A stretch of 64,000 nucleotides of DNA from Mustelus asterias (taxonomy: Eukaryota): contig NC_135830.1 in NCBI RefSeq assembly GCF_964213995.1, positions 8,680,001 through 8,744,000 on the forward strand, in the 5' to 3' direction. A program made the translations under genes and the position numbers. The notes under the pieces are model-generated. The model was not told the origin of the DNA and did no database searches. It saw only the letters and a program-made list of their open reading frames with translations. This document shows positions 28,276 through 28,438 of the stretch, piece after piece. The stretch's first letter is position 1; every line of letters begins with the position of its first letter.

Positions 28276-28438
28276 AAATTGCTTGTTTAGCCCTTGGTGG
28301 CAAGCCACCAAGGTTACCGACGGGGCCGCGAGGAGGCACAACTTCACTGTGAATGCCAAAACACGCCAATAACATTCACAGAGGTAACTACCCAGAGATG
28401 ACTCTCTAGTGAGACCCTTCTAAGAGAGTCATAGTTAC
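28276..28438 (-). ncRNA. R2 retrotransposon 5' end: 28S target sequence plus HDV-like ribozyme, outside rDNA
   Basis: Minus strand starts GTAACTATGACTCTCTTA (28S sequence upstream of the R2 site) and ends TTGT-GCC-TCCTCGC-GGC-CCCGTC-GG-TAA-CCTTGGTGG(CTTG)CCACCAAGG-GCTAA-ACAA, the P2/P3/L3/P1/P1.1/P4/J4-2/P2 order of HDV-like ribozymes. Confidence 0.85.

What the first reader, a model, noticed from the sequence alone, without database searches (positions are those of the whole stretch)
28276..28438. R2 retrotransposon 5' end with an HDV-like ribozyme, stranded in a tRNA spacer
Seen (minus strand): 18 nt identical to 28S rRNA just upstream of the R2 site (GTAACTATGACTCTCTTA); sequence folding back on it (AGAGAGTCAT, TAGTTAC); a CTGTGAATG/CATTCACAG stem; then an HDV-type core with P2 TTGT/ACAA, P3 GCC/GGC, L3 TCCTCGC, GG for P1.1, a 9-bp P4 with CTTG loop, and J4/2 GCTAA holding the expected catalytic C. 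The P1 3' strand CCCGTC would pair with GGCGGG, which precedes AGTAACTATG in 28S but is absent here. Against the sister units, the insert replaces roughly 25 nt of spacer with no TSD. Established: R2 elements insert in 28S rDNA and release their RNA with an HDV-like ribozyme whose P1 often uses upstream 28S sequence. Inference: the host carries or carried an R2 family, and its 5' end was captured here during break repair or as a short non-autonomous derivative. This copy should be inactive in cis.
Basis: partly seen in the sequence, partly recalled or inferred. Interest (0 to 1): 0.85.

Follow-up and report, generated by a model that had tools for sequence, protein, structure and literature searches.

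The report
Orphan R2 ribozyme fragment beside tRNA pseudogene
A 156-base piece of the front end of an R2-type jumping gene, holding a short ribosomal-RNA leader and most of a self-cutting RNA fold, was recently patched into a repeated tRNA-like spacer of a shark genome, where it is most likely a dead fragment.

Summary
On the minus strand, 28438..28283 (156 nt, not 163) carries 18 nt of eukaryotic 28S rRNA lying next to the R2 insertion site. Two hairpins follow, then an HDV-like ribozyme core: P2, P3, L3 UCCUCGC, P1.1 GG, a 9-bp P4 and J4/2 GCUAA.

The P1 3' strand pairs with the 28S hexamer at -28, the commonest R2 cleavage site in print. That hexamer is missing here, and no perfect substitute lies within 1.1 kb upstream.

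Contigs of three other samples of the same species carry this unit, with matching flanks, but have 16 ancestral bases in place of the insert. The junctions share 1 and 3 nt with the flanks, and there is no target-site duplication and no tail. So the event is young and looks like end-joining patch repair.

The same 156 nt, without a difference in two runs, sit in other contigs with different flanks. That is a donor-type copy, at least 112-251 nt longer on the 3' side.

I could not reach the shark assembly, so no 28S-linked or RT-linked full copy was shown.

The scan flagged six similar items elsewhere in this genome; I could not check them.

Verdict: a real, R2-derived, probably inactive fragment of moderate interest.

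The parts
28283..28438 (-). The whole 156-nt piece shared with other copies. The truly new letters are 28286-28437 (152 nt).
   Evidence: Contigs of 4 runs match exactly this span and then run on unlike the window. The joint 28285>28438 skips 152 nt.
28421..28438 (-). 18-nt leader identical to 28S rRNA positions -21..-4 relative to the R2 site
28384..28438 (-). Leader hairpin. The 28S leader pairs with two element-encoded complementary blocks (28398-28407 and 28384-28390).
   Evidence: Fold of -20.7 kcal/mol. A 10-nt exact reverse complement occurs in 0.6% of the null sample.
28347..28381 (-). Second hairpin of the J1/2 region (9-bp core, extended to 12 bp in the fold)
   Evidence: -13.6 kcal/mol
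28338..28341 (-). P2 5' strand UUGU
28325..28337 (-). P3 GCC / L3 UCCUCGC / P3' GGC, the active-site core
   Evidence: Rfam HDV alignment. The 11-mer is unique in the window.
28319..28324 (-). P1 3' strand CCCGUC. Its partner, the 28S hexamer at -28, is absent from this copy.
   Evidence: Duplex of 6/6 pairs, -8.9 kcal/mol, with the hexamer read from L002. No 6/6 partner within 1.1 kb upstream.
28317..28318 (-). GG for P1.1, pairing with the CC of L3
28292..28313 (-). P4 hairpin, 9 bp with a CUUG loop
   Evidence: -14.8 kcal/mol;
28287..28291 (-). J4/2 GCUAA. The candidate catalytic C is at 28290.
   Evidence: Aligned to GGCuAA of the HDV model
28283..28286 (-). P2 3' strand ACAA. Its last 3 nt (28283-28285) also stand in the empty site, so they are junction microhomology.
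   Evidence: joint and table 8
28178..28251 (+). Degenerate tRNA-like pseudogene of the ~1.3-kb repeat unit. The insert lies antisense, about 31 nt past its 3' end.
   Evidence: Alignment to the sister unit's tRNA at 29550-29623. No tool called it a tRNA.

Best explanation
This is a 156-nt internal piece of the 5' end of an R2-type non-LTR retrotransposon.

In the intact element, 28S rRNA and R2 are co-transcribed. The 28S hexamer at -28 pairs with CCCGUC to close P1 of an HDV-like ribozyme, and the RNA cuts itself there. The released R2 RNA therefore starts with a 28-nt rRNA leader. The J1/2 region between P1 and P2 folds into two hairpins; in the first, R2 sequence pairs with the rRNA leader.

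A copy of that region was used as filler when a break in the spacer of a tRNA-like tandem repeat was rejoined. It lacks the first 7 nt, which hold the P1 strand, and it stops within the P2 3' strand. Sixteen bases of spacer were lost. The joints show 1 and 3 nt of overlap, and there is no target-site duplication.

I infer, but did not show, that the filler came from reverse-transcribed R2 RNA rather than from DNA. Without a P1 5' strand the copy should not self-cleave. It has no ORF and no 3' module, so it cannot move.

Shown: the anatomy, the boundaries, the empty site, and a second context for the same 156 nt. Inferred: the R2 donor, the repair route and the RNA intermediate.
For: Anatomy.

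28S identity and the -28 hexamer. GGCGGGA precedes the 18-mer in 79 of 102 matches.

Fit to the published R2 ribozyme class: PMC3774820, Results and first part of the Discussion read. Position -28 is the most frequent cleavage site, and the P1 5' strand comes from 28S.

Core sequence: CCUCCUCGUGG is printed as the most conserved R2 stretch in PMC5035012 (passage). This copy has CCUCCUCGCGG.

Empty site: contigs X1 rec 2, X2 rec 10 and X4 rec 17 match the flanks with 0-1 differences. They carry 16 nt in place of 28286-28437, and those 16 nt resemble the sister units.

Donor-type copy: X1 rec 4 and X2 rec 11 match 28283-28438 with 0 differences, and X4 rec 18 matches 28283-28412 with 0 differences. 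These contigs then continue 144, 251 and 112 nt beyond the 3' end with sequence unlike the window.

Related organism B: a 94%-alike copy (9 differences in 156). Both changes in the P1 3' strand keep pairing with the 28S G's (table 3).

R2 is in print for sharks and rays (PMC13188248 passages; PMC5035012 passage).

The junction type matches class 2 templated insertions: no TSD, microdeletion, microhomology (PMC5110952 passages).
Against: - No full R2 (RT ORF, 28S on both sides) with this 5' end was found, because no tool reached the shark assembly.
- The Rfam HDV score, 19.9 bits, is far below the gathering score of 50.
- My relaxed descriptor is no better than chance.
- No listed contig bridges either filled junction, so the insertion itself rests on the assembly alone (455 pieces were not shown).
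- The empty-site contigs could come from a near-identical paralogous unit rather than the other allele.
- X1's donor-type contig runs 125 nt upstream without a break. That is not what I would expect of a copy embedded in high-copy 28S, so the donor may itself lie outside rDNA.
- In organism B the second G of P1.1 is A, which would break a core pair.
- P2 has only 4 bp here, whereas the paper gives at least 5.
- Six unchecked notes of similar items in this genome, four of them short (158-166 letters) and two of about 1.1-1.2 kb, hint at a repeated process rather than one accident.
Confidence: 0.68

Rival explanations
1. Remnant of a longer R2-derived non-autonomous element (about 1.1-1.2 kb, ribozyme-capped). 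It inserted here by reverse transcription and later lost its 3' part, along with 16 nt of flank, in a deletion.
For: Two unchecked first-reader notes describe such elements outside rDNA in this genome. Donor-type contigs continue at least 112-796 nt past the 3' end of the piece.
Against: It needs two events at a locus whose flanks still match the empty site with 0-1 differences. There is no trace of a 3' module, tail or TSD.
Confidence: 0.12
2. A self-contained mobile mini-element: the ribozyme RNA domain alone is repeatedly reverse-transcribed and inserted, with ends set by the RNA fold.
For: The 5' end of the piece is the first paired base of the leader hairpin, and the 3' end falls in the last helix, P2. 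Four unchecked notes list items of 158-166 letters elsewhere, one said to start at the predicted cleavage site. The HDV fold is reported as very stable in cells (PMC11331408 passage).
Against: Within 85% likeness only one or two contigs per run cover the piece. No TSD or tail is present. The mechanism has no precedent.
Confidence: 0.1
3. Assembly artefact: a chimeric read placed R2 5'-end sequence into this repeat unit.
For: No listed contig from the 4 laid runs bridges a filled junction, and all 3 samples of the species show the empty form.
Against: A clean 16-nt replacement with 1- and 3-nt overlaps is a typical repair signature. The runs may simply come from other animals. 455 pieces were not shown.
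Confidence: 0.05
4. Chance resemblance, or an HDV-like ribozyme of another LINE clade unrelated to R2.
For: The Rfam score is below threshold and the relaxed descriptor is non-specific.
Against: An exact 18-mer of the R2-site flank sits about 100 nt upstream of a core whose P1 strand fits the -28 hexamer 6/6. Chance expectations are 0.10 and 0.05 per window for the two motifs separately.
Confidence: 0.03

Closest known systems
R2 HDV-like ribozymes that cleave at -28 in 28S rRNA (zebra finch, silkmoth, flour beetle A and others; Eickbush, Burke & Eickbush 2013, PMC3774820)
   Same: 28S sequence forms the leader, and the P1 3' strand is complementary to -28..-23. The core has a 3-bp P3, a 7-nt L3, GG for P1.1, and C and A in J4/2. 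J1/2 is long.
   Different: It is not in rDNA. The P1 5' strand and everything after P2 are missing. Cleavage is untested. The paper, as far as I searched it, does not describe the pairing between leader and element sequence.
R2 SIDEs, short internally deleted elements of Drosophila (Eickbush & Eickbush 2012, PMC3414825; abstract and outline seen)
   Same: An R2 ribozyme without the ORF.
   Different: SIDEs keep an R2 or R1 3' end and insert in rDNA by target-primed reverse transcription with typical junctions. This piece has no 3' end and lies in a tRNA-like repeat.
Class 2 templated sequence insertion polymorphisms and endonuclease-independent retro-insertion (PMC5110952, passages seen)
   Same: A polymorphic insert templated from elsewhere, with no TSD, no poly(A), a microdeletion and microhomology.
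   Different: Those were described in human cells. Here the template is a retrotransposon's ribozyme region in a shark, and an RNA origin is not shown.
[quoted passage not shown] 2016, PMC5035012, passages seen)
   Same: R2-lineage sequence outside 28S.
   Different: Those are full families with RT in flatworms. Nothing here shows an autonomous off-rDNA R2.

Membership tests
HDV-like self-cleaving ribozyme | P3 / L3 / P1.1 active-site core, with a conserved U and G in L3 and CC paired to GG | tested here: met
   GCC UCCUCGC GGC ... GG at 28337..28317. It aligns to the HDV model core with high posterior.
HDV-like self-cleaving ribozyme | P1 helix of 6-7 bp that sets the cleavage site | tested here: not met
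   No 6/6 partner for CCCGUC within 1.1 kb upstream. There are two 5/6 candidates at 28420 and 28367.
HDV-like self-cleaving ribozyme | P2 closing the fold, P4, and J4/2 with the catalytic C | tested here: met
   UUGU/ACAA (only 4 bp), a 9-bp P4, and GCUAA.
HDV-like self-cleaving ribozyme | Rfam RF00094 gathering score | tested here: not met
   19.9 bits against 50. The model is built on HDV itself.
HDV-like self-cleaving ribozyme | Self-cleavage | not testable with these tools
   Needs a transcription/cleavage assay.
R2 retrotransposon (full element) | Insertion at the R2 site of 28S rDNA | tested here: not met
   The flanks are a tRNA-like repeat. They do not resemble the 28S target, p 0.25-0.94.
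R2 retrotransposon (full element) | Single ORF with zinc finger, RT and endonuclease | tested here: not met
   The piece is 156 nt. Only ORFs of 29-57 aa overlap it.
R2 retrotransposon (full element) | 5' ribozyme whose P1 uses upstream 28S sequence | tested here: met
   Leader plus a P1 3' strand complementary to the -28 hexamer.
R2 SIDE (non-autonomous) | R2 or R1 3' end joined to the ribozyme; TPRT-type junctions in rDNA | tested here: not met
   No sequence lies beyond P2. There is no R2 3' element among the Rfam matches up to E 10, and the locus is not in rDNA.
Class 2 templated insertion (break patch) | No TSD, microdeletion, microhomology, no tail | tested here: met
   16 nt replaced, with 1- and 3-nt overlaps.
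Class 2 templated insertion (break patch) | Donor copy intact elsewhere | tested here: met
   The same 156 nt sit in contigs with other flanks in 4 of 4 runs. The donor's identity is unknown.
Class 2 templated insertion (break patch) | RNA intermediate | not testable with these tools
   No RNA run was found among the listed holders.

The most novel reading that the evidence does not exclude
In this shark, cleavage at -28 has made the R2 ribozyme portable. Every processed RNA carries its own P1 strand, so copies landing outside rDNA can still cut themselves free. A ribozyme-capped, R2-derived family therefore lives outside rDNA. Its very stable ribozyme domain is also repeatedly reverse-transcribed into chromosome breaks, seeding orphan HDV-like ribozymes around a vertebrate genome. 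That would be a natural route to ribozymes later taken over by host genes. The present locus would be one fresh, polymorphic instance, with ends that coincide with the edges of the RNA fold.
Probability: 0.2. Interest if true: 0.7.

Novelty: new member of a known kind. Interest (0 to 1): 0.42.

Why it matters
The fragment shows an R2-type lineage of the -28 ribozyme class in a shark. A donor-type copy is identical to this fragment over all 156 nt, so the lineage was probably active recently.

It gives a clean before-and-after example of a retrotransposon's ribozyme region used as filler at a chromosome break in a vertebrate germ line.

If the unchecked sister copies are real and independent, the genome would hold a natural experiment on how HDV-like ribozymes spread beyond their home element.

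On its own this locus is a dead fragment with no expected function.

Tried and rejected
Pseudo-target idea. I asked whether R2 endonuclease cut here because the site resembles 28S. Local alignment of both flanks to the 80-nt 28S target gave p 0.25-0.94 against shuffles, so I rejected it.

Relaxed HDV descriptor without P1. It gave 1 hit in the window against 0.91 per random window over 100 random windows. It is useless as evidence, and I say so.

The same kind of descriptor with P1 in the leader, run on 9 metagenome loci with insertions at the site. It gave no convincing ribozyme, so it cannot serve as a positive control.

Alignment of the piece to three metagenome elements. There was no likeness beyond the leader.

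Element sequence complementary to the leader. Among the 17 loci tested, only L063 (8 nt) and L069/L070 (11 nt each; these two are one family) reach 8 nt or more. L062 has 7 nt. The null sample reaches 8 nt or more in 4.4% of cases. The feature recurs but is not general.

Other copies in the window: none.

RNA evidence: no listed run is on record as RNA.

Depths of contigs were not used as copy numbers, as the tool advises.

I did not fold a version with the missing P1 strand added, because joined sequence is not to be made. I paired the two strands separately instead.

I did not run the large protein searches. A route from a metagenome R2 protein to a shark R2 seemed too unlikely to justify the cost.

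Print check. 'HDV-like ribozyme' plus 'shark' found 1 paper, which only mentions both. 'R2 non-LTR' plus 'shark' plus '28S' found 5. 'R2 elements' plus 'outside the rDNA' plus '28S' found 5, all on insects (listing only). None of those I opened describes an R2 ribozyme fragment outside rDNA.

I did not ask for supplementary files. Figure S2 of PMC3774820 (ribozyme drawings) and the tables of PMC13188248 (shark R2 sequences) could bear on the donor.

Full report
What is there.

Read on the minus strand, 28438..28283 is a compact 156-nt unit.
- It opens with 18 nt (28438..28421).
- A first hairpin follows, in which two later blocks (28407..28398 and 28390..28384) pair back onto those 18 nt. The first 55 nt fold at -20.7 kcal/mol.
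- A second hairpin spans 28381..28347 (-13.6 kcal/mol).
- Then comes a core with the layout of an HDV-like ribozyme:
  - P2 UUGU
  - P3 GCC
  - L3 UCCUCGC
  - P3' GGC
  - a six-base P1 3' strand, CCCGUC
  - GG for P1.1
  - UAA
  - a 9-bp P4 with a CUUG loop (-14.8 kcal/mol)
  - J4/2 GCUAA
  - P2' ACAA
- The whole 176-nt stretch folds better than shuffles: z -3.19, with 2 of 200 shuffles as good.

Is it more than chance?

The 18-mer occurs once in the window, against 0.10 expected even with three mismatches allowed. The 11-mer core occurs once, against 0.05 expected. Of 4227 Rfam families searched on 28100-28600, the best match is the HDV ribozyme. It covers the full model length with the core aligned at high posterior, but it scores only 19.9 bits (E 1.6), below the gathering score of 50.

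My own relaxed structural descriptor is not evidence. It hits random windows 0.91 times on average. The case rests on the conjunction of the leader, the core sequence and the fit of the P1 strand.

The 28S identity, by tool.

In locus L002 the match lies inside a complete eukaryotic LSU rRNA (Rfam), at LSU position 2224-2241. GGCGGGA precedes the 18-mer in 79 of 102 matches. AGGTAGCCAAA follows it in 72 of the 91 matches that have enough sequence. The R2 site lies after the AGG.

The hexamer seven bases upstream of the 18-mer pairs 6 of 6 with the P1 3' strand of the window copy, including one G-U pair, at -8.9 kcal/mol.

Fit to what is in print.

I read the Results and the first part of the Discussion of Eickbush, Burke and Eickbush 2013 (PMC3774820). 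They report the following.
- Most R2 ribozymes cut in the 28S sequence upstream of the element.
- Position -28 is the most frequent site, including in zebra finch.
- The P1 5' strand then comes from 28S.
- The processed RNA carries the rRNA leader.
- Oddities at the 28S/R2 junction are copied on through the RNA.

The window copy has two extra bases between the 18-mer and the AGG of the site, which is that kind of junction oddity.

A passage of Kojima et al. 2016 (PMC5035012) prints CCUCCUCGUGG as the most conserved R2 stretch. The copy has CCUCCUCGCGG. R2 elements are reported from cartilaginous fish in passages of PMC13188248, and an angel-shark R2 is named in PMC5035012.

That the genome is a shark I know only from first-reader notes.

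What is missing.

The seven bases that hold the P1 5' strand are not there. The flank begins directly before the 18-mer. No 6/6 partner, with G-U allowed, exists within 1.1 kb upstream. Two 5/6 candidates starting with G lie inside the piece: one at the 28S/element junction (28420) and one in the loop of the second hairpin (28367). The 2013 paper reports that a single P1 mismatch abolished detectable cleavage in horseshoe crab. Activity here is therefore unlikely but not excluded.

P2 has only 4 bp in this copy. The donor continues differently after ACAA, so P2 may be cut short as well.

The setting.

The insert lies in one unit of a tandem repeat of about 1.24-1.37 kb. Each unit carries a tRNA-like segment on the plus strand. 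The sister unit's copy at 29550-29623 is called a tRNA by ARAGORN (Leu, TAG) and by Rfam (49.3 bits). This unit's copy at 28178-28251 is degenerate and is called by neither. The insert is antisense to it and about 31 nt past its 3' end.

How it got there.

I laid Logan contigs of three samples of the same species (X1, X2, X4) and of one run of another organism (X6) on 28100-28640. There are two results.

First, the empty site. Contigs X1 rec 2, X2 rec 10 and X4 rec 17 match the left flank up to 28285 and the right flank from 28438, with 0-1 differences. Between the flanks they hold 16 other bases. Those 16 bases resemble the same place in the sister units. So a version of exactly this unit without the insert exists in all three samples. 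The insert replaces 16 nt, and 1 nt (28438) and 3 nt (28283-28285) are common to insert and empty site. There is no target-site duplication and no tail. I cannot tell whether the empty form is the other allele or a near-identical paralogue. Either way the event is younger than the last common ancestor of those flanks.

Second, the donor-type copies. Contigs X1 rec 4 (425 nt) and X2 rec 11 (409 nt) match 28283-28438 with no difference. X4 rec 18 (261 nt) matches 28283-28412 with no difference. X6 rec 24 (998 nt) matches 28283-28438 with nine differences. All then run on into sequence unlike the window: 144, 251, 112 and 796 nt beyond the 3' end, and 125, 2, 19 and 46 nt beyond the 5' end. So the same sequence sits in at least one other, longer context.

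No listed contig bridges a filled junction, and 455 pieces were not shown. The insertion itself therefore has no support beyond the assembly.

The flanks do not resemble the 28S target, so a mistaken cut by the R2 endonuclease is not indicated. The junction features are those described for class 2 templated insertions: patches at double-strand breaks, thought to be made from reverse-transcribed RNA (PMC5110952 passages).

Between organisms.

Six of the nine differences in X6 are listed (table 3).
- Two fall in the P1 3' strand (28320 U to C, 28323 C to U). Both keep pairing with G's of the 28S hexamer.
- Two fall in unpaired J1/2.
- One falls in the UAA linker.
- One turns the second G of P1.1 into A, which would break a core pair.

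So the X6 copy gives mild support for P1, and some evidence that that copy is itself decaying.

RNA or DNA?

This is inference. The 5' end of the piece is the first paired base of the leader hairpin, and the 3' end lies in the last helix. The HDV fold is described as extremely stable and long-lived in cells (PMC11331408 passage). A trimmed, folded RNA copied into a break would give such ends, but so could chance. No run on record as RNA holds the stretch.

Other copies.

Six first-reader notes in the same genome describe similar things. Four are short items of 158-166 letters: one lies in a tRNA-Val repeat, and one is said to begin at the predicted cleavage site. Two are elements of 1072 and 1201 letters called ribozyme-capped R2 derivatives outside rDNA. 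I could not read any of them. They raise the odds that this is one product of a repeated process, and they are the basis of the novel reading, not of the verdict.

Side observations from the metagenome loci.
- L063 holds an R2-like element with RT and zinc-finger hits, broken into three frames. It has a canonical 3' junction in 28S, but its leader starts at the same base as here, with non-28S sequence upstream.
- L069 and L070 hold a leader from about -28/-29 in a context with no rRNA match.

Leader-headed elements away from intact 28S therefore occur in other organisms too.

Limits.
- No tool reaches the shark assembly.
- Supplementary files were not asked for.

Verdict.

The link to a full R2 in this host remains to be shown. 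This is a new member of known kinds, of moderate interest. Interest would be higher only if the sister copies prove to be an off-rDNA family.

Noticed in passing
window 60613-61620: At least 10 head-to-tail copies of an 84-nt unit, 62-86% alike. This may be a zinc-finger array, since 84 nt equals 28 codons; I did not translate it.
   Followed up: no
window 29550-29623 (+), with sister copies at about 28178-28251 and 26936-27010: The repeat unit's tRNA is called Leu(TAG) by ARAGORN at only 74 nt. Its body matches the degenerate copies in the neighbouring units, so the anticodon may be a mutated form of another tRNA type.
   Followed up: partly
window 17437-17509 (-): A tRNA found by Rfam (42 bits) but not by ARAGORN.
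   Followed up: no
L063:824-4146 (-) and L063:1-573: A metagenome R2-like element with RT and zinc-finger hits and a frame broken in three. Its 3' junction in 28S is canonical, but its 28S leader starts at the same base as the shark copy, with non-28S sequence upstream.
   Followed up: partly
L069:273-297 and L070:1890-1916: Two related metagenome contigs carry 25-27 nt of 28S leader, starting near -28/-29, with no rRNA around them. An 11-nt reverse complement of the leader lies about 60 nt downstream. No RT ORF was seen in the 1.9 kb available.
   Followed up: partly
window 28100-28160 and 28480-28640: Parts of the repeat unit flanking the insert attract 95-170 contigs per run at 85% likeness, so this tRNA-like unit family is highly repeated in the species and in organism B.
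   Followed up: no
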